A DNA stretch of 64,000 nt from Octopus sinensis. Its lineage: Eukaryota. Of this stretch, positions 3,555-52,786 are shown piece by piece. Both the position numbers and the translations under genes were made by a program. Every line of letters starts with the position of its first letter. The stretch's first letter is position 1. The stretch is from NCBI RefSeq assembly GCF_006345805.1, contig NC_042997.1:174406001-174470000 (forward strand). The letters run 5' to 3'. Below the pieces are notes generated by a model. That model saw only the letters and a program-made list of their open reading frames with translations, did no database searches and was not told where the DNA came from.

Positions 3555-4946
3555 AAAATTTGAACCTCGGAATTCTTTGCATTCAATAAAACTGTGGCCC
3601 ACGATGTGTTTGCAGTGCCAGTACTCATATCAACATTTGACCTACCTGATTCGACGCTTGCCGAGATCCGAGCTATCGATGTGGAAAAACCTGAAGATAC
3701 TAACCAACACACATAATTTCTACATCAATAGTGACGTAGACTACCTCTACCTAAAACGAAAGTAAAGCTTAGCATCAATCCAGACTGCCTTTGAATGTCG
3801 TGTCATGTCCCCTCGGCAATATCTTTTAACCACCAAGTGTTGAAGTGCATCCCTTAACCAAGTTTGCATACATGAGGCTGATAACATCATGAGACTTGAA
3901 AAGCAGCTCTTTGTGGAGCATTTATGGCTTAATGATGTTAAATACATAACCAAAGAAGTCGCACGACTCTAAATATCATCAGATGAAAGGATGAGCGAAT
4001 ATCGGTAGAAGACCAGCGTGGATATGTTAGCAGAAAGCTCTGGGATGATAGCGATCATGAAAATAGTCTGTCACGGACCAACAACCGGACTACTAACTCC
4101 CACTTTTAAGGGTAATATGCACCAGATACTTGATGCACAAAAGGGACAGAGAAGGAGAGAAAAGCAGGAAAAAGTGATAACCGATGCAGACTTTGTGGAG
4201 TTAACACCGAAAGTGTCACCCACATCATAATCAGTTGTCCGATGAAACATAATGTTGTTGCTAGGACACAGTATAATGAGATCCGAACGAAGGATAAACC
4301 CGAGGCCAAAGAAATAAGAACCTACAGAATGGTAAAAGCCATAGCTACTTAATTTAAATGCGTACTTGTGGAATGTGCCAGTTTATACCGTCATAAAATG
4401 TAAACATAACAGACCTGACATAGTAATTATGGGATAAGGAGAGAAACTGTGTACAGTTGTGGAAATCAGATGCCCAGCGTTTGTTAATCTGAAGCTAAAG
4501 GTCAGCGAGAAAGAATATACCTACGCTGAACTATTGAGTAATCTACTACTAATCTATTCATATTATAAGTTCAGGTTTATACTCGTAATAATTTGGGCAT
4601 TGGGATATGTAACACATTGTCGAAATATCTTCAGAAATTAGTCTTCTTAAAACCAGAGAGGAGAAAGTTGATTAAAATACTACAGATCCAAGCCATCACA
4701 GGAACTGCAAAAATCTGTAAAACATTCCAGAAGTTCTTCGTTTAAGTATATTTGAGCTTGTCTAGATATGCAAGTATATGCAGAGAATACATACATCAAA
4801 CAAAATATACAAATCTGCACAGATCTACATATACATACAAAAATATCCCGTTGATGTTGACATTCCAATGAAAGAATCTTGGCTGTAGATTAGAAACCAG
4901 CTCTTTCTCAATTGGCAAGAAATCTTTAAATAAAACTCACCAATAA
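3555..4946 (+). mobile_element. RLE-type non-LTR retrotransposon (R4/Dong-like), 5'-truncated and decayed; post-RT region, CCHC finger, restriction-like endonuclease and 3' UTR
   Basis: Manual translation across frameshifts gives AFNKTVAHDVFAVPVL, NSDVDYLYLKRK, a CRLCGVNTESVTHII zinc knuckle, HNRPDIVI...EIRCP (PD-D/ExK region) and a C-terminal LQIQAITGTAKICKTF* (stop ~4745). Followed by (CATA)n. Confidence 0.85.
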
Positions 4947-5067
4947 CATAGATACATACATACATACATACACACATACTTACATACAACCATTCATACG
5001 TACATACATACATACATGCATTCATTCATTCATACATACATACATACATACATACATACATACATAC

Positions 5068-6049
5068 TTAAAAGTGAATTGAGCAACATTGTTCGAACTG
5101 GCAGTGAGCTCCTCAAGTAGCACTCTCTTCCTGATGATCTCCCATACTATCCCAAAAAAGCTGGGCTCTCTTACCTCAGAGAAGACATGGATTGAAAGCA
5201 CCCAGTATACAAAATGACTATATATGGGTACGTTGCACGGAAGCTCAAAGAAGACAGTAGTTTGACACGATGCGCAGCCTCTGTTGAACACAAGACCACT
5301 ACATCACATCTCAATATGAAAGCTATTCGTTTGCAATCCAGGAACAGGAGATCGCCGCAAAGTACCTGTTGAACAAGAGAGACAGTGATGCTCTTGTGAT
5401 CCCAAGGTGCAATCGCATATGTAGGCTATGTCATGTTTATGTGGAAAACATCATGCATGTGGTTAGCAGCCGTCCTAAAATGTCATCACGATCCTACCTC
5501 CCTATGCGTCACGATGTTGTTGCTAAAACAATTTACAACGCCATTCGAAAAAGACAGACCTGAAATAAATTTAGAATCTCCCTCTTTTATGGAATACATT
5601 CATAAACACTAACTCAAAGAATACTGGTGGAATATTCCCATCAAAACTTCTGTGAAATGTAAACGGGCCGCATACTGTTGTTTGGGACAGAGGGACAAAG
5701 GTATGAACCATCATAGAGGTCAGTTGCCCTGCAGATATAAACATCTCTTCGAAGATATCTATGGACAATTGCTTCTATATCCAGACTATGAATTCATATT
5801 CATAGCAATAATAATTGGAGCACTAGGCTTTGTTAGTAAATGCTTAAAGGAGAATCTGGAAAAACTGAGATTTGCAAAAAGAGAAATCGACCGGCTAATT
5901 CGTACATTACCAGTGCAATCTGGGAGTAGAACAGTAAAGAGATACAAAACTTTTCTCAAGTTCCAAATGGAAATTTGTCTGCAGCCTTGTATCTTTGTTG
6001 GAAACCTGCTCCCTCCTCAGTGGAAGATTTATAATAATTAAAAATAGAA
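5068..6049 (+). mobile_element. Second, diverged copy of the same RLE-type LINE lineage (CCHC plus RLE, decayed)
   Basis: AIQEQEIAAKYL, CRLCHVYVENIMHVVSS.P, MRHDVVAK, EVSCPADIN and IIIGALG motifs. Begins immediately after (TACA)n and ends before CATACATACAT. Confidence 0.85.
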
Positions 6050-6700
6050 CATACATACATATGTACATAGAGAAACAATACCGATTTTCCGATATCCTTG
6101 CTTCCAAAAGGGTCATCTGTGCTCACGTCATAATAATTCATCAACACTCCTGTACCAACTTATTGTACACCTCCAATGCGTCTAATGCACCATGAACAGC
6201 TCTGCATATCTTGGATCTATATCGGTTGATGTTTACGTTCGACGATCGCAATTCCCTTAACTATAGTAACCATTGCTAAGAATAAACTGAACTAAATAAA
6301 CAGATGATCTTTCAAAATTTAGACATCGACACTTACAAAATCTAATGTAAATTAACGTGTGTAGACACACGGTACACACAGTGCTACCTGCGAAGGTATA
6401 GTGGATTAGACTGGCGAACGCAGTAATTTCATGTTTCTCCTATTAATTTATCAGGATCAAAACAAATGCAGGACCATAAGTTGGGATAACATTGGTGGTA
6501 TACCTATATATATATATATATTTATGTGTGTGTATGTATGTATGTATGTATGTATGTATGTATGTATGTATGTATGTATGTATGTATGTATATGTATGTA
6601 TGTATGTTGTATGTATGTATGTATGTATGTATGTATGTATATGTGTGTGTATATATATATGGGTACACCAGCTATATATATGTGTATGTATGTATGCATG

Positions 6701-22724: not shown

Positions 22725-24642
22725 GTTTCTTTATTGGCCACACAGGGCTGCACACAGATGGGACAAGTTACAAGGTAGAGCTTTTCTTTTGGGGGAGAAA
22801 AAAAAAAGGTGGCGTAGGTTCTCGATGAAAAGGGATCGTAAAAGGGAAGAAAAGAACAAAAAAAAATTTTTTTTAAATAAAAAATTTTAAAAAATATAAA
22901 TAAAAATAAAAAAGAAAAGGAAAAGGAGCAAAAGAAAAAAGAAATGAAAAAAGAAGAAAAAGGGGAAAAAGAGGAAGAGGGAAAAAAACGATCAATAGGG
23001 ATCGTGTATCACAGTGTTATGATATATGGTGTAAAGGGGAAAGCAAGTAAGGTTTATCCGTGGGAAGAAAAGCCTACGAAAAAGACCACGGTAACCTTGG
23101 TCAATATTGTTATATGTTACCACATTTGTTTGCAAGTGGGTAACCCTCTGTTTTCAATTTCTGGGTTCATAGGATTATGCTCAAGGTGGCTTCGTCATTC
23201 ATACGTGCCATCCTTGCTACATTCACCCATCTTTTTTTTAAAACATTCGCTAGACAAAACTTGCCTCTCTACTCTCACTTTCCTTTTCAAGTGGTACTTG
23301 AAGAAGTTGATGAGAGATTGACCAGAGAGGAAAGTGTTTGTCTCCAATCCTTTCAGACGCGTCCACCAGATACATTCTTTCGCCATAGCCACAAGGATGA
23401 TGAAAATAGCTCTGCCTTCCCGTTTGAAGGAAGGAGGCGTGACAATATTGACGATAGACTCAGCTGATAAACCGACTCGTCCCACACGTAACAGCAGTTG
23501 TTCGACATAAGCCCACAGGTGGGAAATTGTTGGACACTGCACGAGTGCGTGCAGAACGGTTTCGTCGCTCTGACCGCATCTCGGGCAGGTCGGCCCCGTG
23601 TTTCTCGAGCCGTGTCTGTAGAGCTTATCCCGAACGGGTAGCGCTTCTCGGTAGCACTGCCAGGCCAGGGATCTCTGGAAGTTGTCCATGGGCCCTGGGC
23701 CGAAAATCGTCCCGAATAGGCGGGTCAGGTACTCCTCGTCGACGTCCAGGTTCGCCCCGAGCTCGTCGTCGTACCTCCCCTCCACTAATCCCCTATAGAA
23801 TGCTTTGGTTGTGATGAAGTCACTCAAGGTCGACCCAGGACGGCAGAGTTGCTTGAGAGCAACGCGACACTCGCGGTGCCATTCGCCCTTCCTCGGCCTC
23901 TTTATGATCCACGACTGCAGTTCGGTCATGGAGACGAGCTGCGGGAAAGCGTGCCTCACAAACGGCGACCACACCTCTTCACCGTCGTCTACGAAGAGCC
24001 GGAGATGTCGCAGTCTCAGCGCGTGTCTGCGCATCATCAACCACGGCATGCCCAGTCCTCCTTTTAACGGGTGTTGACAGCAAATGGATCGCCTGACCAT
24101 CGGGACGCATCCTTTCCACAAGAAGCGAAAGAGAATGCGTTGTAGTTTGGTGATGGTAGGGTCGGGACAAGGCACGACGGTCAGGCGGTAGTAGATGACG
24201 GACGCGATGTACGTGTTCGCCACCTCCGCCCGACCTTTTAGGGACAGTTTCCTCTCGGCCCATTGCCGGGCGAGAGTGACCACCCTACTCGTTATCTCGT
24301 TCCAGTTCCTCTCCACTTGGAGGTCCGGACCAAACCAGACCCCGAGCAACTCAACCGGGCCGTCGGTCCAGCGTCCCACGACGGAGGCGCTGGTAGACGG
24401 CATGGGCTTGCTTCTCCAGGTGCCTAGTCGCAAGCCCACTGACTTTTCCCGGTTGATTTTCCCTCCTGTCACCGCTTCGTAGTTTTTCAGTGTCTCGCCG
24501 ACCTGCTCGATGTGCTCGTGGCTAGACACTATGACGGTGACGTCGTCCGCGTATGTAGACACGCTCGTCCCGCATCCCGGTTCTCCCGGGATGCCCCTCA
24601 AAGTTGCCAGCTTCCGCAATAATGGCTCGAGAGTCAATACGT
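22722..24642 (-). mobile_element. Tx1/L1-clade LINE, 5'-truncated copy 1 (C-terminal RT, zf-RVT-like finger, 3' UTR)
   Basis: ORF track 23195-24922: LTLEPLL, YADDVT, INREKS, LLGVWFG, LSLKGRAEVAN, GGLGMP and CPRCGQSDETVLHALVQC. 3' end CAATAAAGAAACTTAT abuts (TATC)n and the 5' junction enters TATC-like repeats. Confidence 0.95.
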
Positions 24643-24692
24643 GATAGATAGGTAGGTAGGTAGATAGATAGTTAGACAGACAGATAGATAGA

Positions 24693-25050
24693 TAAGTTTC
24701 TTTATTGGCCACACAGGGCTGCACACAGATGGGACAAGTTACAAGGTAGAGCTTTTCTTTTCGGGGATGAAAAAAAAACAAAAAACAAAGGAAACAAAAA
24801 AGAAGGTGGCGTAGGTTTTCGATCAAAAGGGATCGTAAAAGGGGAAAAAAGAGCAAAAAATAATAAAAAAGGAAAAGGAGCAACAAAAAAAGGGGGGAGG
24901 GGAAGAGGAAAAAAATGATCAATAGGGATCGTGTATCACAGTGTTATGATGTAAGGTGTAAAGGGGAAAGCAAGTAAGGTTTATCCGTGGGAAGAAAAGC
25001 CTACGAAAAAGACCACAGTAACCTTGGTCAATATTGTTATATTTTACCAA
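24693..25050 (-). mobile_element. Tx1 LINE copy 2 (3' UTR only)
   Basis: Near-identical to 22722-23120, with (GATA)-type repeats on both sides. Confidence 0.93.
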
Positions 25051-32081: not shown

Positions 32082-35000
32082 TGTTTCTTTATTAGCCACA
32101 CAGGGCTGCACACAGATAGAACAAATTACAAGGTAGAGCTTTTTTTTGAAGGTATTAAAAAAAAAAATAAAATAAAATAAAAAAAAAGGAAGGGGGAGGT
32201 TCGATCAAAAGGGATCGTAAAAGGAGAGAACGAGGACAAAAATAAGGGGGGTTAAAAAAAAAAAAAAAAAAAAAGGGGGGGAGAGGAAAAAAAATGATCA
32301 ATAGGGATCGTTATCACAGAAATGTCAATATGAAGTGTAAAGGGGAGGACAGGTGAGGTTTACCGTGGAAAGAAAAGCCTGCGGAAAGACCACGGTAACC
32401 TCGGTCAATGAAGTCACATTTTATATTTCTTTTTTTTTTTTTTTTTGCAAATAAGAAACTCTCTGTTTTCGATTTTGGGTTCATAGGACTATGCTCAGGT
32501 GGCTTCGTCATTCATACGTGCCATTCTTGCTACATTCACCCATCTTTTTTTAAAACATCGCTAGACACAAAACTTGCCTCTCTACTCTCACTTTCCTTTT
32601 CAAGTGGTACTTGAAGAAGTTGATGAAAGATTGACCAGAGAGGAAAGTGTTTCTCTCCAATCCTTTCAGACGCGTCCACCAGATACATTCTTTCGCCATA
32701 GCACAAGGATGATGAAAATAGCTCTTCCTTCCCGTTTGAAGGAAGGAGGCGTGACAATATTGACGATAGACTCAGCTGATAAACCGACTCGTCCCACACG
32801 TGACAGCAGTTGTGTTCGACATAAGCCCACAGGTCGGAATTGTTGGACACTGAACGAGTGCGTGCAGAACGGTTTCGCGCTCTGACCGCATCTCGGGCAG
32901 GTCGCCCCGTGTTTCTCGAGCCGTGTCTGTAGAGCTTATCCCGAACGGGTAGCGCTTCTCGTTAGCACTGCCAGGCCAGGGATCTCTGGAAGTTGTCCAT
33001 GGGCCCTGGCCCGAAAGTCGTCCCGAACGGCGGGTCAGGTACTCCTCGTCGACGTCCAGGTTCGCCCCGAGCTCGTCGTCGTACCTCCCCTCCACTAAAC
33101 CCCTATAGAACGCTTTGGTTGTGTTGAAGTCACTTAAGGTCGACCCAGGACGGCAGAGTTGCTTGAGAGCAACGCGACACTCGCGGTGTCCATTCGCCTT
33201 CCTCGGCCTCTTTTTGATCCACGACTGCAGTTCGGTCATGGAGACGAGCTGCGGGAAAGCGTGCCTCACAAAAACGGCGACCACACCTGTTCACCGTCGT
33301 CTACATAGAGCCAGAGATGTCGCAGTCTCAGCGCGTGTCTGCGCATCATCAACCACGGCATGCCCAGCCCTCCTTTTAAAGGGTGTTGACAGCAATGGAT
33401 GGATCGCCTGACCATCGGGACGCATCCTTTCCACAAGAAGCGAAAGAGGATGCGTTTTAGTTTGGTGATGGTAGGGTCGGGAAAAAGTACGACGGTCAGG
33501 CGGTAGTAGATGACGGACGCGATGTACGTGTTCGCCACCATCCGCTCCGATCTTTTAGGGACAGTTTCCTCTCGGGCCCATTGCCGGGCGATAGTGACCA
33601 CCCTACTCGTTATCTCGTTCCAGTTCTTCTCCACTTGGAGGTCCGGACCAAACCAGACCCCGAGCAACTCAACCGGGCCGTCGTCCGCGTCCACGACGGA
33701 GGCGCTGGTGGACGGCATGGGCTTGCTTCTCCAGGTGCCTAGTCGCAAGCCCACTGACTTTTCCCGTTGATTTTCGCTCCTGTCACCGCTTCGTAGTTTT
33801 TCAGTGTCTCGCCGACCAGCTCGATGTGCTCGTGGCTAGACACTATGACGGTGACGTCGTCCGCGTATGCAGACACGCTCGTCCCGCATCCCAATTCTCG
33901 CGGGATGCCCCTTAGAGTCGCCAGCTTCCGCAGTAGTGGCTCAGAGTCATACGTATAGAAGCGCCGAGAGGGAGCATCCCTGACGGACCGAACGTGCAAT
34001 GTCGAAAGGTCTCGATAGATGTCCATTTACGCGAATTACCGAACGGATGCCTCTGTACAAGGCAGTTATCCAGCCGCGGAAACGGGACCGAAACCAGCCG
34101 CTCTCAGGACTGCCTCCAAGTATCGATGGTCTACCCTATCAAAGGCTTTCGATTGATCCAAGTTGATCATGGCCCCACCCATGCCAGGTTCGTTAACTAC
34201 CCTGTCTATGATGTAGCGCATCAGATGGAGGTTGTCATGGATGGTCCGGCCTGGCACGGCGCATGTTTGCGCCTTGTCGACCAGTTTCTCGATGACAAGC
34301 GCCAACCTCTTGGCTAGCACTTGGCCAAAATTTTCAAGTCTGCATTAAGCAGGTGATGGGCCTAAAGTTATCTATTACATTTCCTTTGTTTAGATCTTTC
34401 TTCAGCAGTGTTACGGCTCCTCGGCTCACAAAACCAGGAATGCTCCCGTTTTGCTGCCAGTTGCAGTACACCGCCGCCAAGAGATCTCCAAACAAGTCTG
34501 GCATACAATTGTAAAGCTCGTAGGGTAGACCATCCAAACCCGGTGATTTGTCCCCGAGCATTCTGCCATCGCTTCCCGCACTTCCGCCGCCGTGATGGCA
34601 CCTTCGCAGCACCCTGCCTTTCTTGTCGAGAGTCGTGGTAGGCTATGTAGGTAGGCACTGAAGTCCACCCTACGTTCTGCCCTCCACTCGTTCCGAACAG
34701 TCGGGGCAAAATGCTGCTGAAAGGCTCACACATTTTTCTTGGCTCGAGCAATTCGCGCCCCTGTTCATCTACCAGTGACCGAATGGTGGCTTTGTTGCCC
34801 TGTGCGCTCTGCCACGGGCCTCTTCGCGGCTCTCTTCGCGGCTCCAAACCTTCGTTTCCTTAGAGCACGCAATCCTAGCTCTGACAGCACATCCTTCGTG
34901 TTTGGCGTTAAGTGTTGGTCGAGGGCCAACCTCGCCGCCAAAACGTCGGATGCGATGCCGCTTCTAATTGCCTCTTCTAGCTTCTAACTAGCTCACACCC

Positions 35001-45537: not shown

Positions 45538-46058
45538 ACACACATACACACACGCAATCACATGCAAAGAAATACATTCACTCGCACACAGAAAATTACA
45601 GACCCATGAATACACATATACACAGACATACATATGGAAGCTTATACAAACCACTCGTAGAGATAAGCACACACAAAATACAAATAAATATATACATCGC
45701 ATAAATACACACCCATAAATAACATTGTTCAGACACACATAATCACTAATGTGTTAGGAAATATAGCACACACATAGACACGAACACGCAAACACACACA
45801 CAGAGATACACACACATCAGTGTATAGTGTTTACTGTTTTAACTCTCCTATCCGTCGGCTATAGCCATGCTGGGGCGCCGCCATTAGCGTTCTTATTTAT
45901 TTCCACTTTCTTTTCGTGCTTCATTTTGCTAAATGGGAGAGTTGGATATCATCGCTCTCTTTTGGGTTTCTTGTTGTGACGTACGTTCATCTGGAATCTC
46001 TGATAAAAAAAGAACAGAAAATAGTAATATTAAGAAACATAATAATAATAATAATAAT

Positions 46059-46612
46059 GCCCTGATGCAGTACCAGGCAGTGGCTCTCATGGCTTCTGAT
46101 CTTAACTGATTGGAAGTGTTATCATGTACATTGTTTTGTCTTGGTATAAAAGATGGGCTACAGCAAATATTCTGCTCAATACCACAGATTTGCTTGTCAG
46201 TTGTTTGACCATAACCAGTTGAGCATGCCCCTTAGTGGCTGACGATATGTGCATCTCTGATCACGAGCAGAAGTAGTGGAGGAGCATCATAGCCATGTGT
46301 TGAGAGGGATTCTTTGAGGTTTGAATAATTCACCTCTGGAAACATGGGTGGTTCTTTCAACATCCTTAAACAACCCTTATTCAGGGACCTTTTGAGCGGG
46401 ATGGGCTACTCAACCTGAAGAAAATTCTAACTAGGCCCCACCTGCAAGGTCATGTGCTGTTTATCTTGATATGAGATCACCATGTCGCACACATATGGTT
46501 GTGATGCATGTGCCTGGTGTACCCTTATCAGACGGGTAGTCATGATGGGTATATTGGGCTTCGTATATTTTACCCCAGTGTCACTTTGATGGCATGCACT
46601 GCTCTCTCACTC
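46059..46612. mobile_element. Unclassified ~555-bp non-coding interspersed element inside (AAT)n, copy 1
   Basis: GCCCTGATGCAGTACCAGG...GCTCTCTCACTC with (AAT)n directly on both sides. Second copy at 49966-50476. Confidence 0.85.
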
Positions 46613-46689
<77 letters not shown>

Positions 46690-46811
46690 TAATAATAATA
46701 ATAATAATAAAGCTTGCTTATTTTTTAAATACATTCACATCTACGCCTTGGATTTTTAGGCAATGTATTGAAAGGTTTTTGTTGTGTCAATCTGAAACTG
46801 TTACTAAATAA

Positions 46812-46990
46812 TCCTTTTCCTACTGTAGGCATAAGGCCTGAAATTTGAGGGAAACCGCAAATCGATTACATCGACCCCAGTGTTCAAATGATTTTTATTT
46901 TATCGTATTGACGCACCGGAAGAATGAAAGACAAAATAGACCTTGGCAGGATTTGAACTCAGAACGTAACGACTCCACCAGCTCGTCGCC
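46812..46990 (-). mobile_element. SINE family A (tail type 2)
   Basis: Head and core on the minus strand. 13-bp TSD TGTTACTAAATAA at 46799-46811 and 46998-47010. Confidence 0.85.
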
Positions 46991-47119
46991 ATATAAATGT
47001 TACTAAATAACATTAATAAATATAATAAGTAAGAATTCAGGAAGTAAACAATAAGAGGTCAAACTAAATCCTCTGTTTAATTGCTGTATCGCGTTAGATT
47101 CATTTATGTTCCCACTTTA

Positions 47120-47474
47120 GATCCCACGTGTCTCATATTGATGGAACAGACAGAGACAAGACGTCTAGAGCAAGGACGATGTACTGCAATAGATTGGGTT
47201 TCAAGGGCCCACGGCTGTTTAACTGTCTCCCGAAGTATCTGAGGATCTTCCATGGAGTTGATGTAGTCGTTTTCAAACGTGAACTTGACCTCTGGCTCGT
47301 CGAGATCCCGGATGACCCAATATCTAGGCAAGAAACTCAAAAGAAGGATGCAGCATCGAACTCCATCCTTCACCAAAAGCCGCTCCGACAAAGGTGGAAA
47401 GATAATTACCATGGCGGTGCTCCAGCATGGCCACAGTCATTGGACTGAAACATATAAAAGAATAAAAGAATAAA
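47120..47474 (+). mobile_element. 3' end of an APE-type LINE (CR1/Nimb/Jockey-group-like)
   Basis: ORF 47128-47448: GFKGPRLFNCLPKYLR...FKRELDLWL.EIPDDP...ASNSILHQ, a typical C-terminus. Ends in a (TAAAAGAA)n-like tail. Confidence 0.8.
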
Positions 47475-47542
47475 TACAGTTTACATAATTTTTGCAATGA
47501 TCGTAACATTTTTAATCATATATATGTTTGTGTGTATGTGTA

Positions 47543-47601
<59 letters not shown>

Positions 47602-48063
47602 AATAATCCAAATAAACAGAAAATTCGTCGGCTTTGATAAACAGAATATATACATACATGTATACGTGTGAGCAAAGAAAAAGTAGAGACTGAAAGATTT
47701 TCCGTTGATTAACATTAAAGTACACATATGTATATGTAATAGAGCCAACTTACTCATATTCTAGGCTCAAAGAATTAGAGGAGAGAAGATATACACTATG
47801 CCCTCATTCTTTGCTATTTCTTTATTCACATATATAAATGTATAAATATTCTGTGTATCAAATCCAAGGAATTTTTGTCTGTTTATTTGCATAAGTGTCT
47901 CCATATCAGCTCACTTGAATTTCACTTATAGACACGCTTTACCCCGCTGACTTGGTCCTCGGTGATAATTTCGGAGTGTACGTTCAAATCTTTTGAGCGC
48001 TACAAAGTGTTCTGTATATAGAGATTCCCACGGCTTCATCTGTTAAGTAGATATATATATATA

Positions 48064-48195
48064 GACGCTGGTAAGAAGCTTGCTTCACAATCACATGGTT
48101 CCGGTACCTTGGGCAAGTGTTTTCTCGGGCCGACCAAAGCCTTGTCAGTGGATTTGGTAGATGGAAACTGAAAGAAGCCTGTAGTATATAAATAA

Positions 48196-48284
<89 letters not shown>

Positions 48285-48515
48285 GTGTGTGTGTGTGAAT
48301 ATATTGGTGCGTTTGTGTTTGTGTCTGCCTGTGTTTAGCCTTCCACCATCGCTTACCAATCGATGTTGTATGTTTACGTCCCCGTAACCTAGTGGTTCGG
48401 CAAAAGACACCGATAAAATAAGTACAAGGCTTAAAAATAATAAGCCCAGGGTCGATTTCTTCGACTCCAGCATGGCCACTGTCAAAATGACTGAATGAAG
48501 TAAAAGAGTGAAAGA

Positions 48516-48517
<2 letters not shown>
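48064..48517 (+). mobile_element. SINE family C with an expanded internal microsatellite
   Basis: Head GGTAAGAAGCTTGCT, CCTTGGGCAAGTG core, (TA)n/(TG)n block 48184-48310 and standard tail. Confidence 0.85.
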
Positions 48518-48575
<58 letters not shown>

Positions 48576-49169
48576 ACACACACACACATACATACATACA
48601 TACATACATACATACATACATACATACATACATACATACATGCATACATACATGCATACATATGCGTTTGTCTGGGGTGTGCATGTCTTTTGATTACAAA
48701 ATTATACGCACATTCGCACACACACACCTACATGAACATATAATTCATACATGGCCGTATGCATTGCCTGATGCACTGATAAAAACGCTTACCCGAACTT
48801 CCTTAATCAGATATCCTCTGAATGGTGTCGCATTAAGGAAAAGCAAGACCTAAGCTTCACAAATATTTTCAGCGTTTCCTTACCTTCATTAACATTAGTT
48901 TTTATCGTCATCACCATTGCTTTCACTGCCAACAACACTACCGCCACCACCACCACCACCACCACCACCATCGTCATCATCGAGCTCGTAATCATCATCA
49001 TCATTATTGTCAACATTACCACCGCTACATAACCATCACCACCACCACCACCATCACAAATACCATCATCACCATCATTTTTATGAACATAAAAACTGTC
49101 ACCATCGTAATCACCATCATCATCATCATCAACAACAACATTTTTTATTATCTTTTATTTTATTTTTTT

Positions 49170-49512
49170 TTTTACTTTTTACTTGTTTCAGTCACAAGAT
49201 TGCTACCGTGCTTGGACACTGCCTTGAAGAAATTTAGTCCAACGAATCGACCCCAGCACTAAAATAAGATCAAAGGTCCTTTCCGTGGCATGGGCTCATT
49301 AAGGCCGGTTTCCTATATTCTGTAGTGTGTATATCTCCTCCCTAGACGGGACGCCAGTCCATCGCAGCATTACTCAATTTTGCCAGTTGAATGACCTGGA
49401 GTAAAATAAACTAATGTATTTCGTTTAAGAACACAGCGCAGTGTCTTGTAGAGGAATCGAAACAGTTTTGTGATTATAAGTTCAGCAACCTAACCACTAA
49501 GTCACGCGCTCC
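49170..49512 (-). mobile_element. SINE family C tail fragment (49170-49260) adjacent to a SINE B-variant (49270-49512)
   Basis: CTTTTTACTTGTTTCAGTCA tail. Minus-strand GGAGCGCGTGACTTAGTGGTTAGG head and GATGGACTGGCGTCCCGTC body. Confidence 0.7.
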
Positions 49513-49819
49513 ACCTCCACAGCACATAACGTAGGCATAAACCATCCAGTAAAACATATATAATCGACACACAAGATCCACTAACATCAAAACAAACCAC
49601 ACCTCAAGGACACATACGTAGTATACTAGTGTTAATCTATGACCTGAAAAGCCAATATTGCACACATCACAAGTATACTAGATATTGCGGGGGAAACTTC
49701 TCAAAACATTATGATGTTTAACAATAACTCCACCACCGCCACCAATAACAACAACAACAACAACAAGAAAAATAACAACAAAACAACAACAGCAACAATA
49801 AAAATAATAAAAATAATAA

Positions 49820-49944
49820 TGGTTTCAAATTTTGCCACAAAGGCAGCAGTTTGAGAGTGGGGGAGATGAGTCGATTACATCGACCCAAGTGGTACTTATT
49901 TTATCGAACCCGAAAGGATGAAAGGCAAAGTCGACCTCGGCGGA
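49820..49944 (-). mobile_element. SINE family A 3' part (tail type 2)
   Basis: Core GCCTTTCATCCTTTCGGG on the minus strand and tail CCTTTGTGGCAAAATTTGAAACC followed by ATT repeats. Confidence 0.75.
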
Positions 49945-49965
49945 ATAATAATAGTAATAATAAAT

Positions 49966-50476
49966 GCCCTGGTGCAGTACCAGGAATTGGCTCTCATGGC
50001 TTCTGATCTAATCTGATTGGAAATGTTATCATGTAGATTATTTTGTTTTGGTATAAAATATGGGCTGCAGTAAATATTCTGCTCAACACCACAGATTAGC
50101 TGTCAGGTATTTAACCTTATCCGGTTGAGCATGTCCCTTGGTGGCTGACGGTATGTGCATCTCTGATCATGAGCAGAAGTAGTGGAGCAGCATAGCCACA
50201 TGTTGAAAGAAATTTTGTGGAGTTTGAATAATTCAATATCCTTAAACAACCGCTCAGGGACATTTTGAGAGGGATGGGCTACTCGACCTAAAGAAAATTC
50301 TAACTGGGCCTCACCTGAAAAATTATGCGCTGTTTATCTTGATAGGTCACCATGTCGCGCACATATGGTTGTGATGCATGTGTAACCTTATCGGACGGGT
50401 AGTCATGATGGGTATACGGGGCTTCGTATATTTCACCCCAGTGTGACTTTGATGGCATACAATTGCTCTCTCACTC
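49966..50476. mobile_element. Unclassified (AAT)n-embedded element, copy 2 (with internal deletions)
   Basis: Same termini as copy 1, with AAT-type repeats on both sides (49944-49965 and 50477-50554). Confidence 0.85.
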
Positions 50477-50554
50477 AATAATAATAATAATAATAATGAT
50501 AATAATAATAATAATATTAATAATAATAATAATAATAACAATAATAATAATAAT

Positions 50555-51565
50555 ATGGTTGCGAACACAGCATTAGAGCAGAAGAAAACACATAGAACGG
50601 TATGTAAAAAATGCCACAGAACCGCTATTATTAGAAGTAAGATGGTTAGGCTTGTGTAGGATGAAAAATTGCAAAGATAAAGCACTCTAAAAGAAATTGA
50701 AAACGAATGAAACTGAAAATAGGTGGATAAAGAAAAGTATGCATGGTCAATTTCATAGGGATGTTAAAGATAAGACAGACAGAGAAAAAATATAGCTGTG
50801 GTTGACTAAAAGTGATTCAAAACCGGAAATGGGGGCTCTAATCTATGCTGCCCAAGAGCAAGCACTAAGAACAAATTACATAATATACAGAATAGACAAC
50901 ATATCAGAGTGTGATACTTGCAGAATTTGTGGACAAAATGGTGAAACCGTATGGCATATTACCAGTCAATGTACGCCACTGGCCCAGGAGGAATATAAGA
51001 GACGCCACGACAATATAGCAAGGCTTGTCCATTGGACACTTTGCAACAAGTATGGACTTGACACAGCAAAAAATTGGTACGACCATAAACCCGAAGGCAT
51101 CAACGAAAATGATAATGCAAAGATCCTATGGGATTTTATGGTTCAGTGCGACCATGAGATTGAGAATAGGAAGCCAAACATAGTTTTAATTGAGAAAGAA
51201 AGCAAACTATGCTGGATCATAGATATAGCATGCCCAGCTGACAAGGAATGCGATTAGGAAGAAAGAAAAGTCGATAGATATGACATGTTAGCTTGGACGG
51301 TTAAACAATTGTGGTCGATATAAAAGGTGGTTGTAGTAACAATAATTGTCGAAACCCTGGGAACAGTGAGCAAAAATCTTGAGAAGTACATGGAACAAAT
51401 ACGGGCTGCAGTAAAGGTGGAGCACTTGCAGAAAACAGCACTGCTTGGAACCGCTTGAATACTTCGGAAGGTGCTCGAAAAATAAGGGATGTTTCCTTAG
51501 TTTACTGGTAGTGAACAGCTGACACCGTAGTACATCTGCAGCGTATGAGGCTGTAGGAAGGCAAC
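50555..51565 (+). mobile_element. R4/Dong-like RLE LINE, 5'-truncated
   Basis: KSMHGQF, AAQEQALRTNY, CRICGQNGETVWHITSQC, YKRRHDNIA, RKPNIV...IIDIACPAD and LQKTALLGTA. Preceded by (AAT)n and followed by AATAATACTAAT. Confidence 0.93.
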
Positions 51566-51834
51566 AATAATACTAATTCGTCATTATATGTTCAATACCC
51601 TATAGGGACCAGCAGTTCTTATGTTGATATCATTATCACCCATTACTGGCTGTGTACATCTGGACTTAATTCAAAACCAGAAGTCTTCATTATGGCAGAG
51701 CAGGATCTGTATCTGCTCACTAGAAGTTACCAAGGTAACATTCTTAAAAAATCGTGCTAATCCTTCCTGTCGCTTTCGTCTCATAAGCAGAGAAACAATT
51801 GACCTTTAGTTGTTGTATTTTAGCCTTAAGTGAG

Positions 51835-52200
51835 TAAACTGATCACAATAAGAGACCTGGTCAGTATTTGTACTACCTCATTATGGACTGCCATGTGAGA
51901 AAAACCAGTGGTTACATAAGACCGCAATGTAGTAAAAATTAAAATTCATCTCTCTTTGGGATTTTATTATTCAGACTAATCGAACTATTCAGACCAAATA
52001 CACCACATATAGTGACGTAAAATCACATTGACAAAACATGGTTGTGCACACATTTGTCAAATCGAGCAGACTGAAAGAGCTCTTCGAAAATGTTTGAAAA
52101 GTTCAGTAAATACAAGGACCTTGAAATAGAGGTTTCAAAAATGACATCTAAGAACTACAAATGTAGCTTTGATTGTTGGAGCTTTGAGGATAAATGTCAA
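51835..52200 (+). mobile_element. Older RLE LINE fragment (endonuclease domain)
   Basis: HYGLPCEKNQWLHK, LWDFIIQTNRTIQ, FEKFSKYKDLEIEVSKM and LIVGAL across frameshifts. Confidence 0.7.
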
Positions 52201-52210
52201 ATGGAGCTCT

Positions 52211-52329
<119 letters not shown>

Positions 52330-52786
52330 GTAGATAGATAGATAGAAAGATAGTTCTGGTTAGAGATGGAAAGCTATGATAACGGATAGAATACTGATAT
52401 CGAAAGAATCAACTGTTTAGTTTCACTAACGCATCATTGTAAGTTACGAGTTTGTCTAAATGTGTGAATACGCTTCTACATGTGTGTAGTAGACTGACAG
52501 ATCTATATCTCATCATTGTAATAAATTCTGGTGTTGCAATCTCCTGATATAATCTGGTAGTTATTTGTTTTCAAATGTAATAGTATAGCATCCGAAACAA
52601 AGATTAAGGCAGGATGAAGTCATATTATGTGTAGAAATAGCATAGATTATACATATGACTATTTTTTAGGCACTAATTACGCTGAGTTCAGTACCGTAGC
52701 AAACGTTGCACTAACGACTACTATATGTCACTCATACATATATGCATACATACATATACAGAGGTTTATTATATGTGTGGGTGCGT

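What the first reader, a model, noticed from the sequence alone, without database searches (positions are those of the whole stretch)
46039..50554. Unexplained ~550-bp non-coding element found only inside (AAT)n arrays
Seen: two copies (46059-46612 and 49966-50476) share identical termini (GCCCTG.TGCAGTACCAGG ... GCTCTCTCACTC) and orientation, and both ends abut AAT repeats. I find no long ORF, TIRs or convincing Pol III boxes. There are several local hairpins near one end (CTGGG..CCCAG, TACCC..GGGTA, GCACAT..ATGTGC). Unlike truncated LINEs, both copies have both ends. Copy 2 shares an AAT array with a Dong-like LINE but has no visible tail similarity to it. Inference: a non-autonomous, microsatellite-targeted retroelement of an unclassified type, possibly a parasite of an R4/Dong enzyme.
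Basis: partly seen in the sequence, partly recalled or inferred. Interest (0 to 1): 0.72.

Follow-up and report, generated by a model that had tools for sequence, protein, structure and literature searches.

The report
AAT-repeat-associated non-coding octopus retroposon
The two ~550-bp copies belong to a real, multi-copy, non-coding mobile element of octopus genomes that sits in (AAT)n repeats and was probably copied in by the enzyme of a neighbouring Dong-like LINE; it is a new family of an ordinary kind of genomic parasite.

Summary
Copy 1 (46059-46612) and copy 2 (49966-50476) are homologous (blastn E 1e-157), share both termini and orientation, and are flanked by (AAT)n on both sides. The window is octopus DNA.

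I found at least 11 more copies hidden in Octopus bimaculoides "uncharacterized protein" models, which are antisense translations of the repeat. Six more loci came from short-read contigs of an unidentified octopod.

The family is non-coding. Copies form a star phylogeny, with copy 1 96% identical to the consensus of the others.

Truncated copies lose the 5' side (starting at about 32, 127 and 130) and keep the ...CTCTCTCA 3' end. This is the signature of target-primed reverse transcription with + as the sense strand.

Young copies carry pure AAT arrays, always in the orientation seen beside Dong-like LINEs. Two old copies have no AAT flanks.

The element shows no similarity to the one Dong-like LINE tail available, so dependence on a Dong/R4 enzyme remains an inference from shared target, orientation and adjacency.

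Verdict: a non-autonomous, (AAT)n-associated retroposon of modest interest.

The parts
46041..46058 (+). 5' flank of copy 1: (AAT)6. Seven degenerate, in-phase AAT-like units lie just before it, from about 46020.
46059..46612 (+). Copy 1, full length (554 bp), young. It is 96.4% identical to the leave-one-out consensus of the other family members.
46613..46710 (+). 3' (AAT)~33 array of copy 1. It is either the element's tail or the target array.
   Evidence: TRF reports 32.7 copies with 97% matches.
49944..49965 (+). 5' flank of copy 2: AATAATAATAGTAATAATAAAT. It starts at the GGAAT of a truncated common octopus SINE (~49810-49943).
   Evidence: compared with the fuller SINE copy at ~46810-46975.
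49966..50476 (+). Copy 2, with both ends intact. It has internal deletions of 27, 7, 3, 3 and 3 bp and is 89% identical to the family consensus.
50477..50555 (+). (AAT)~26 array shared by the 3' end of copy 2 and the 5' junction of the LINE.
50556..51565 (+). 5'-truncated Dong-like LINE, about 1 kb. It carries a CX2CX8HX4C motif and a restriction-like endonuclease region. The ORF ends at about 51485, and the roughly 80-nt 3' UTR ends in GGAAGGCAAC. It is the candidate type of enzyme donor.
   Evidence: homologues carry zf-RVT, and RVT_1 lies upstream in L001. One search shows 72% nucleotide identity to an (AAT)n-flanked LINE in L003. One search is also relevant.
51566..51577 (+). Short AAT tail or flank of the LINE: AATAATACTAAT.

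Best explanation
The element is a non-coding, non-autonomous retroposon family of octopods, about 554 bp long. Its sense strand is the window's + strand. [quoted passage not shown] The enzyme most likely comes from a (TAA)n-specific LINE with a restriction-like endonuclease, of the Dong/R4 type that is abundant in octopus.

Proposed steps:
1. A master copy lying in an AAT array is transcribed. It has no recognisable pol III head and contains internal T4 tracts, so transcription is probably read-through or pol II. The resulting RNA ends in (AAU)n.
2. The LINE protein nicks a (TAA)n array.
3. The (TTA)n bottom strand anneals to the RNA's (AAU)n tail and primes cDNA synthesis.
4. cDNA synthesis runs to the 5' end, stops early (giving 5'-truncated copies), or switches template to a second element RNA (giving extra partial 5' heads).

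Shown: family membership, non-coding nature, fixed termini, a 5'-truncation series, fixed orientation relative to AAT, and adjacency to Dong-like LINEs. Inferred: transcription mode, tail annealing and the identity of the enzyme.
For: 1. **A real dispersed family.**
   - Two copies lie in the window.
   - At least 11 O. bimaculoides UniRef 'proteins' are antisense translations of other copies.
   - Six distinct Logan loci are 69-79% identical to copy 1 and have unrelated flanks.
2. **Star phylogeny typical of a master-copy transposable-element family.** Identity to a leave-one-out consensus is 96.4% for copy 1, 89% for copy 2 and 70-82% for the Logan copies. Pairwise K2P distances are smaller to copy 1 than among the old copies.
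3. **TPRT signature with + as sense.**
   - L016 starts at position 32, L012 at 127 and L009 at 130. Their upstream sequence shows no similarity to positions 1-130 (z -0.9 to 1.6).
   - L009 keeps the ...CTCTCTCA 3' end and L012 keeps a diverged ...TTTCTCACTC 3' end. The 3' end of L016 lies off its contig.
   - The O. bimaculoides model HJ33 lacks roughly the first 14 nt.
   - The only 3'-truncated copy, L018, is cut by a later LINE insertion.
4. **AAT association and orientation.**
   - Copy 1, copy 2 and L004 have AAT units on both sides.
   - L009 has a degenerate AAT array at its 3' end.
   - The 5' head of L018 abuts (AAT)5.
   - Every array reads AAT on the element's + strand.
   - Array purity tracks copy youth.
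5. **Same niche as Dong-like LINEs.**
   - Copy 2 shares an array with a +-strand, 5'-truncated LINE.
   - In L018 the element is followed, after TTAATAATT, by a +-strand LINE ORF.
   - The same LINE lineage is flanked by (AAT)n in another species.
6. **Literature.**
   - Dong targets (TAA)n (PMC3812793).
   - Dong-R4 is the most abundant recently active LINE group in O. vulgaris (PMC13282606).
   - A full-length Dong consensus exists for O. bimaculoides (PMC9115989).
7. **Extra partial 5' heads.** L018 has positions 2-68 placed before 3-464. Two O. bimaculoides models have a segment ending at about 136, then AAT, then position 1 onward. This fits template switching at the RNA 5' end, as proposed for SINEU (PMC4494074).
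8. **Non-coding.**
   - Stop counts equal those of shuffles.
   - The consensus has at least 5 stops in every frame.
   - There is no codon-position bias.
9. **No terminal inverted repeats, and no Rfam or tRNA hit.**
Against: - The element shows no similarity to the 3' UTR, or any other part, of the only Dong-like LINE in the window. The usual SINE-LINE tail match is therefore missing.
- Two old full or near-full copies, L007 and L012, have no AAT flanks. The three 5'-truncated copies have no AAT upstream. This could reflect array decay or target deletion, but it also fits a model in which the element carries its own AAT ends.
- Upstream arrays of full-length copies are uniformly short, at 5-7 units. 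That could mean they belong to the transcript rather than to the target.
- There is no direct evidence of transcription, of an empty site, or of the strand used as template.
- The sample is small and biased: 8 DNA copies, and the Logan copies were found through ORF-containing contigs.
- The clade of the window LINE (Dong/R4 versus HERO or NeSL) was not tested.
Confidence: 0.6

Rival explanations
1. The element is a retroposon that carries its own AAT repeats: a short (AAT)5-7 leader and an (AAT)n tail made by reverse-transcriptase slippage or read-through. It is not targeted to pre-existing arrays. The arrays are made by the element, and any LINE that tolerates an AAU-type tail could move it.
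For: - Upstream arrays of full-length copies are uniformly short: 6, 7 and 5-6 units in copy 1, copy 2 and L004.
- The 5'-truncated copies L009, L012 and L016 have no AAT upstream.
- Copy 2's upstream array begins exactly at the GGAAT of a truncated SINE.
- Non-LTR elements are a known source of microsatellites (PMC3812793, PMC2887409).
Against: - In front of copy 1's pure (AAT)6 lie seven degenerate, in-phase AAT-like units, which suggests an older resident array.
- The related LINE lineage clearly accumulates in pre-existing AAT arrays, forming chains of inserts in L002 and L003.
- Two independent adjacencies to Dong-like LINEs occur inside one array.
- Loss of upstream target sequence at 5' junctions is expected for this class of element. 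In L018, for example, the LINE junction removed the last 90 bp of the element.
Confidence: 0.17
2. The element is not an independent family. It is a piece of a larger autonomous element: the 5' or 3' UTR of a Dong-type LINE not represented in the window, or an internally deleted derivative (SIDE-like) sharing both UTRs with its parent.
For: - Octopus has several Dong-R4 families (PMC13282606), and only one 3' end could be examined here.
- The element lies directly upstream of LINE 3' parts twice, in the same orientation.
- From my own knowledge, R2 elements have such internally deleted derivatives.
Against: - Four copies (copy 1, copy 2, L004, L007) have the same two termini with no coding sequence attached.
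- The two LINE adjacencies join at different LINE positions, and AAT units lie between the element and the LINE.
- tblastn with 120 LINE proteins finds nothing inside the element or next to L004, L007, L009, L012 or L016.
- There is no similarity to the LINE in the window.
- An origin from a LINE UTR is not excluded, but the element clearly moves as its own unit.
Confidence: 0.1
3. The element is a DNA transposon derivative with a TAA/TTA target, either a PIF/Harbinger-type MITE or a Helitron.
For: The flanks are A/T-rich trinucleotides. PIF/Harbinger elements duplicate TAA/TTA, and Helitrons insert at AT (both from my own knowledge).
Against: - There are no terminal inverted repeats.
- The ends are GCCC... 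and ...CTCACTC, not TC...CTRR with a subterminal hairpin.
- The flanks are arrays tens of units long, not a 3-bp duplication.
- One-sided truncation with a constant opposite end is not a cut-and-paste pattern.
Confidence: 0.03
4. The element is a structured non-coding RNA gene or regulatory module kept by selection. The hairpins near one end would be functional.
For: - The + strand of copy 1 folds better than shuffles (z = -3.6), while its minus strand does not (z = -0.1).
- The 5' 120 nt have z about -2 in both copies.
Against: - Copy 2 has z = 0.0.
- The RNAalifold consensus over 8 members is -3.85 kcal/mol with 18 pairs.
- The terminal hairpins of copy 1 pair in 77.3% of cells versus 77.2% in shuffles, and the covariation score is 0.081 versus 0.086.
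- No Rfam family matches.
- Copies decay neutrally.
Confidence: 0.03
5. The two copies result from a local segmental duplication, and no mobile element is involved.
For: Two copies lie 3.4 kb apart in the same orientation.
Against: - The sequence outside the AAT arrays is unrelated between the two loci.
- Many other copies exist in other loci and in other data sets.
Confidence: 0.01

Closest known systems
SINEU-3 and other SINEU families of crocodilians (Kojima 2015, PMC4494074)
   Same: - Both are short, non-autonomous retroposons that share the target preference of a target-specific LINE group.
- The partner is inferred from that shared preference.
- Extra sequence is added onto the 5' ends by template switching.
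- There is no functional internal pol III promoter, and co-transcription with the target has been suggested.
   Different: - SINEU has snRNA-derived heads and poly(A) tails. Its target is a Mariner transposon, and its partner is a Tx1-clade LINE with an APE endonuclease.
- The element here has no recognisable head and an AAT tail. Its target is a microsatellite, and its presumed partner has a restriction-like endonuclease.
R2 SIDEs: short internally deleted, non-autonomous derivatives of the rDNA-specific R2 LINE (recalled from my own knowledge: Eickbush and Eickbush 2012)
   Same: Both are non-coding parasites of a LINE with a restriction-like endonuclease. Both insert at the LINE's own target, in the LINE's orientation, by TPRT.
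   Different: SIDEs keep the parent's 5' ribozyme and 3' UTR. Here no ribozyme was found (Rfam), and there is no 3' UTR similarity to the LINE that could be examined.
Dong and other (TAA)n-specific R4-clade LINEs (PMC3812793; Kojima and Fujiwara 2004)
   Same: Both insert in (TAA)n/(AAT)n with the array reading AAT on the sense strand. Both leave 5'-truncated copies and occur together in the same arrays.
   Different: Dong is autonomous, several kb long, and encodes a reverse transcriptase and endonuclease. This element is 554 bp and non-coding, with no detectable sequence relationship to the LINE.
Microsatellite-associated repeat families: lepidopteran RTE-derived families (PMC2887409), and the 'cryptic repetitive flanking sequences' that hamper marker development
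   Same: In both cases a dispersed repeat family has copies that abut one particular microsatellite motif.
   Different: In those cases the microsatellite is usually generated from the element's own tail. Here arrays lie on both sides of full-length copies, and a target-specific LINE shares them.

Membership tests
Classical SINE (pol III transcribed) | The 5' head derives from tRNA, 7SL or 5S RNA and carries internal A/B boxes. | tested here: not met
   ARAGORN finds no tRNA in the window. Rfam at E <= 10 finds nothing inside copy 1 or copy 2, and at E <= 1 nothing relevant in six other copies.
Classical SINE (pol III transcribed) | There are no internal pol III terminators (T4 or longer) before the 3' end. 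| tested here: not met
   Every copy has 2-4 T4+ tracts on the + strand, for example at positions 76, 332 and 510 in copy 1.
Classical SINE (pol III transcribed) | The 3' tail is homologous to the 3' end of the partner LINE. | tested here: inconclusive
   There is no similarity to the one Dong-like LINE 3' end available (z = 0.0, P = 0.53). Other octopus Dong-R4 families could not be examined.
Non-autonomous TPRT retroposon (LINE-dependent) | There is a constant 3' end with variable 5' truncation among copies. | tested here: met
   Copies start at about 1, 4, 32, 127 and 130, and at about 14 in the O. bimaculoides model HJ33. The 3' end ...CTCTCTCA is kept in every copy whose 3' side is visible, diverged to ...TTTCTCACTC in L012, except L018, which is cut by a LINE. 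The sample is small.
Non-autonomous TPRT retroposon (LINE-dependent) | There is no coding capacity. | tested here: met
   
Non-autonomous TPRT retroposon (LINE-dependent) | The copies are dispersed and diverge from a master sequence in a star phylogeny. | tested here: met
   
Non-autonomous TPRT retroposon (LINE-dependent) | Mobilisation by a LINE-encoded protein has been demonstrated. | not testable with these tools
   This needs a retrotransposition or in vitro TPRT assay.
Dong/R4-type (TAA)n target specificity | Insertions are flanked by (TAA)n/(AAT)n on both sides. | tested here: inconclusive
   The feature is met in copy 1, copy 2 and L004, and at one visible end in L009 and L018. It is absent in L007 and L012, and absent upstream of the 5'-truncated copies. 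No genome-wide count was possible.
Dong/R4-type (TAA)n target specificity | The orientation relative to the repeat is fixed and matches that of the LINE. | tested here: met
   All arrays read AAT on the element's + strand. The same holds for the Dong-like LINE copies in the window, L018 and L003. Other LINE families in L003 lie in the opposite orientation, so orientation does carry information.
SIDE-like internally deleted LINE derivative | It shares the 5' UTR (with an HDV-like ribozyme in R2) and the 3' UTR with a parent LINE. | tested here: inconclusive
   No ribozyme family was found, and there is no 3' UTR match to the available LINE. No full-length octopus Dong with its 5' UTR was available.
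MITE / PIF-Harbinger-type DNA transposon | It has terminal inverted repeats and a 3-bp TAA/TTA target-site duplication. | tested here: not met
   There are no terminal inverted repeats, and the flanks are long arrays.
Helitron | It has a 5' TC end, a 3' CTRR end, a subterminal 3' hairpin, and inserts between A and T. | tested here: not met
   The termini are GCCCTG... and ...CTCACTC. The subterminal hairpins are not conserved.

The most novel reading that the evidence does not exclude
The element could be a 'tail-less hijacker' of a microsatellite-specific LINE with a restriction-like endonuclease. It would share no UTR with the LINE and be recruited only because its read-through transcript ends in (AAU)n, which base-pairs with the nicked (TTA)n target strand. 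In that case (AAT)n arrays in octopus would act as a self-renewing safe-haven niche in which any RNA ending in the repeat can be copied. This would be a relaxed, target-annealing mode of trans-mobilisation not described for the R2/R4 group.
Probability: 0.22. Interest if true: 0.55.

Novelty: new member of a known kind. Interest (0 to 1): 0.35.

Why it matters
- If the reading is right, octopus (AAT)n microsatellites are a shared landing pad for Dong-like LINEs and at least one non-coding passenger family. That helps explain why octopus genomes are so rich in both microsatellites and unclassified short repeats.
- In the literature I could search, I found no described non-autonomous partner of a Dong/R4-type LINE.
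- It would be a natural test case for what an enzyme with a restriction-like endonuclease needs from its RNA template: UTR structure, or mere annealing of the repeat tail.
- Dong-R4 elements are among the most recently active LINEs in Octopus (PMC13282606), so a passenger family may contribute to insertion polymorphism.
- Practically, more than ten O. bimaculoides UniProt 'uncharacterized proteins' are antisense translations of this repeat and should be flagged as annotation artefacts.

Tried and rejected
- **Protein-coding element on the minus strand.** Copy 1 has only 4 stops in one minus-strand frame, and several related contigs carry 130-187-aa ORFs in that frame. I rejected this reading. 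Stop counts are within shuffle expectation, the family consensus has 5 stops, and there is no third-position excess. The long ORFs reflect ascertainment bias, because the copies were found through ORF databases.
- **HDV-like or other ribozyme, tRNA, 5S, 7SL or snRNA head.** Rfam and ARAGORN found nothing.
- **Conserved RNA structure or functional hairpins.** Rejected.
- **Terminal inverted repeats.** None.
- **Tail or any other similarity to the LINE.** None.
- **Minus strand as sense.** I considered this because the partial-dimer junctions could be read as a full copy followed by a 5'-truncated copy. I rejected it because independent truncated copies lose the + 5' side.
- **Exact-pattern scans for more copies.** Scans of viral and metagenome contig collections gave 0 hits.
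- **DNA for the O. bimaculoides UniRef models.** None is on record.
- **Loci fetched through LINE homologues (L001-L003, L019).** These come from other species and contain no copy of the element.
- **PDB sequence search with the LINE ORF.** No informative hit.
- **Source of the SRR118693xx runs.** It could not be identified from the literature.
- **Dong paper PMC309301.** It is not held in the library.

Full report
**1. Observation**

The region was read directly.
- Copy 1 is at 46059-46612 (554 bp) and copy 2 at 49966-50476 (511 bp), both on the + strand.
- They align end to end. blastn gives 81% identity counting gaps, E 1.6e-157; aligned columns are about 90% identical.
- Copy 2 differs mainly by deletions of 27, 7, 3, 3 and 3 bp.
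- Both begin GCCCTG(A/G)TGCAGTACCAGG and end TGCTCTCTCACTC.
- Copy 1 is preceded by (AAT)6 and followed by (AAT)~33. Copy 2 is preceded by AATAATAATAGTAATAATAAAT and followed by (AAT)~26.
- No further copy lies in the window, by blastn or by a family profile.

The window is microsatellite-rich, about 36% G+C, and eukaryotic. The protein hits described below place it in Octopus.

**2. The neighbouring LINE**

Directly after copy 2's downstream array lies a 5'-truncated LINE of about 1 kb on the + strand, at 50556-~51565.
- It has a CX2CX8HX4C motif followed by a restriction-like endonuclease region (RKPNIV...IIDIA).
- The ORF ends at about 51485. The short 3' UTR ends in GGAAGGCAAC and is followed by AATAATACTAAT.
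- Homologues carry Pfam zf-RVT. In locus L001 the same element has an RVT_1 ORF upstream. The endonuclease therefore sits C-terminal to the reverse transcriptase, as in R2/R4/Dong-type LINEs.
- Closely related copies in another species (L003, 72% nucleotide identity over 1 kb) are also bounded by (AAT)n and end ...GGGAAGAACAT(AAT)n.
- Dong elements are known to target (TAA)n (PMC3812793).
- Dong-R4 is the most abundant recently active LINE group in O. vulgaris (PMC13282606).
- A full-length Dong consensus exists for O. bimaculoides (PMC9115989).

'Dong-like' is reasonable on the basis of target and architecture. The clade itself was not tested.

**3. More copies**

No octopus genome could be searched at the DNA level, so I used stop-free translations of the element as bait.
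- Two word-based protein searches returned three O. bimaculoides UniRef 'uncharacterized proteins'.
- One exhaustive profile search returned eleven more element-derived sequences. They are further O. bimaculoides models plus ORFs called on Logan short-read contigs from runs SRR11869384-94.
- All of these are antisense translations of other copies of the element.
- The Logan ORFs led to six distinct loci, each assembled in up to four of the runs.
- These loci are 69-79% identical to copy 1 and have unrelated flanks.
- The family is therefore dispersed, multi-copy and present in at least two data sets.

**4. Anatomy of the family**

The alignment is A2, with 8 members.

| Copy | Extent in copy 1 coordinates | 5' flank | 3' flank |
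|---|---|---|---|
| L004 | 1-554, full length | (AAT)5 | ATTAACAATAATAAAAG |
| L007 | 4-554, full length | no AAT | no AAT |
| L016 | starts at 32 | no AAT | runs off the contig |
| L012 | starts at 127 | no AAT | no AAT |
| L009 | starts at 130 | no AAT | degenerate AAT array |

- The upstream sequence of L016, L012 and L009 shows no similarity to positions 1-130 (z -0.9 to 1.6). L009 keeps the ...CTCTCTCA 3' end, and L012 keeps a diverged ...TTTCTCACTC end.
- L018 reads (AAT)5-AACAACAACAATATA, then positions 2-68, then positions 3-464, then GTTAATAATTTG, then a +-strand Dong-like LINE ORF. It carries an extra partial 5' head, and a later LINE insertion cut off its last 90 bp.
- Two O. bimaculoides models end ...WYCIR(A/T)LANLWY*. 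Back-translated, this places an internal segment of the element, ending at about position 136, plus one AAT unit directly in front of the 5' end of a full copy.
- Partial 5' heads therefore recur with different breakpoints.
- Copy 1 is 96.4% identical to a consensus built without it. Copy 2 is 89% identical and the Logan copies 70-82%. Old copies are closer to copy 1 than to each other. This is the star pattern of a master-copy family active over a long time.
- AAT arrays are long and pure beside the young copies. Beside the old ones they are degenerate or absent.

**5. What it is not**

- **Not coding.** ORFs are at most 58 aa. Stop counts match dinucleotide shuffles. The consensus has at least 5 stops in every frame. 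Substitutions show no codon-position bias.
- **Not a classical SINE.** There is no tRNA and no Rfam family even at E <= 10. Every copy has internal T4 tracts.
- **No known ribozyme**.
- **No terminal inverted repeats**, and the ends are not Helitron-like.
- **No conserved RNA structure.**
  - The + strand of copy 1 folds unusually well (z = -3.6). Copy 2 does not (z = 0.0).
  - RNAalifold gives only -3.85 kcal/mol over the family.
- **No similarity to the LINE.** There is none to the LINE's 3' UTR or to any other part of it.

**6. Mechanism**

One-sided truncation at the + 5' side, with a constant + 3' end, is the hallmark of target-primed reverse transcription. It sets + as the sense strand.

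Where AAT arrays are present, they always read AAT on that strand. This is the orientation of the Dong-like LINE copies in the window, in L018 and in L003. Other LINE families in L003 sit in the opposite orientation within the same arrays, so orientation is informative.

The element lies next to a Dong-like LINE inside one array in two independent loci, with different junctions.

The most likely model has four steps:
1. A master copy is transcribed by read-through or pol II into an RNA ending in (AAU)n.
2. A (TAA)n-specific LINE protein nicks an array.
3. The (TTA)n strand anneals to the tail and primes cDNA synthesis.
4. Early stops give 5'-truncated copies, and template switches at the RNA 5' end give the extra heads.

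Inferring the partner from shared target preference, 5' additions by template switch, and dependence on target transcription all have a published precedent in SINEU (PMC4494074).

The steps that are shown are the family, its termini, the truncation series, the orientation and the adjacency. The enzyme, the transcription mode and tail annealing are inferred.

**7. Rivals**

- **The element carries its own AAT leader and tail and is not array-targeted.** This is the strongest rival.
  - For it: upstream arrays of full-length copies are uniformly 5-7 units; 5'-truncated copies have no AAT upstream; copy 2's upstream array starts at the GGAAT of a truncated SINE.
  - Against it: degenerate, in-phase AAT units lie further upstream of copy 1; the related LINE lineage clearly accumulates in arrays.
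- **The element derives from a LINE UTR.** This cannot be excluded without full-length octopus Dong sequences. Even so, the element moves as its own unit.
- **DNA transposon, structured RNA gene, or local duplication.** All three are contradicted by the tests in section 5 and by the dispersed copies.

**8. Comparison and novelty**

The element works like the target-sharing non-autonomous retroposons already described: R2 SIDEs (from my own knowledge) and SINEU (PMC4494074). It fails the defining features of a pol III SINE, and shared UTRs with a LINE could not be shown.

I file it as a new family of the known kind 'LINE-dependent non-autonomous retroposon'. I found no described non-autonomous partner of Dong/R4 LINEs in the searchable literature. 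Repbase, Dfam and the octopus repeat libraries could not be searched, so the sequence may already be catalogued as an unclassified repeat.

**9. Verdict**

This is an ordinary but tidy case of a microsatellite-associated passenger retroposon. Interest is 0.35.

The most novel reading still open is recruitment purely by annealing of the repeat tail, with no shared UTR. I give it a probability of about 0.2.

Noticed in passing
O. bimaculoides UniRef entries A0A0L8H6S8, FNA5, GW01, I0P0, I493, GIN5, FV58, FU08, G9T0, HJ33, I1L9 (P0001, P0002, P0123-P0128, P0137-P0140): At least 11 annotated 'uncharacterized proteins' of 50-117 aa are antisense translations of this non-coding repeat. They are almost certainly annotation artefacts. 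Five are near-identical 50-101-aa models, which suggests a young subfamily in that species.
   Followed up: partly
L018 (reverse complement) 1-100; O. bimaculoides H6S8 and FNA5: Extra partial 5' heads of the element recur in front of full copies, with different breakpoints. L018 has positions 2-68 joined directly. The two O. bimaculoides models have a segment ending at about 136 plus one AAT unit. I read this as template switching at the RNA 5' end. Breakpoints cluster near 127-136, where two truncated copies also start.
   Followed up: partly
window 4000-4745 and 5068-6049 (+), with (ACAT)n at 4946-5067 and ACAT-like sequence at ~6050-6075: Two further fragments of LINEs with restriction-like endonucleases are present. 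The second is bounded by (ACAT)n on both sides. A different microsatellite-specific LINE family therefore seems to sit in the same window.
   Followed up: partly
window 50556 versus L003 9745; L019 5430-5450: The 5' truncation point of the window's Dong-like LINE lies within about 9 nt of the truncation point of a 72%-identical copy in another species. Both copies are about 1.01 kb. L019 shows that the ORF continues upstream (...GGRGLIGCEDC...). This is either a truncation hotspot or a coincidence.
   Followed up: partly
L002 and L003, 1-20393 (ENA ERZ25066843, species unknown): At least seven transposable-element blocks of 1-3.3 kb are chained together, separated by (AAT)n arrays that all read in the same direction. 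They include LINEs in both orientations. One is a 1019-aa ORF on the minus strand that is only 28% identical to the window LINE in the endonuclease region. There are also blocks encoding HTH_animal and DUF8422 proteins. AAT arrays appear to be a shared landing pad for several families.
   Followed up: partly
window ~49810-49943: Copy 2's upstream AAT array starts at the GGAAT of a common octopus SINE. This SINE copy lacks its last ~45 nt or more; compare the fuller copy at ~46810-46975. The missing SINE end is not found downstream of the insertions, which suggests a target deletion.
   Followed up: no
window 52040-52353: A short C-terminal LINE fragment (KYKDLEIEVSKM..., ALIVGAL) runs straight into a (TAGA)36 array at 52211-52353.
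   Followed up: no
window 48510-48700 and 47534-47674: Sub-threshold Rfam hits to mir-297, mir-466, mir-5014 and others fall on (TA)n(TG)n(ACAT)n microsatellites and are low-complexity artefacts.
   Followed up: no
window 23195-24922 (-) and 32772-34847 (-): A 575-aa ORF from another LINE family (reverse transcriptase C-terminal region with a CX2C...H...C motif) is present, along with a second, broken copy. The G+C-rich stretch at 32-36 kb corresponds to the latter.
   Followed up: no
window 46170-46189 / 46253-46272 and 50077-50096 / 50159-50178: An internal 20-nt imperfect inverted repeat (75-80% complementary, with about 63 nt between the arms) is present in both window copies. It lies next to the 127-136 breakpoint cluster. 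By eye, the arms are not well kept in the older copies.
   Followed up: partly
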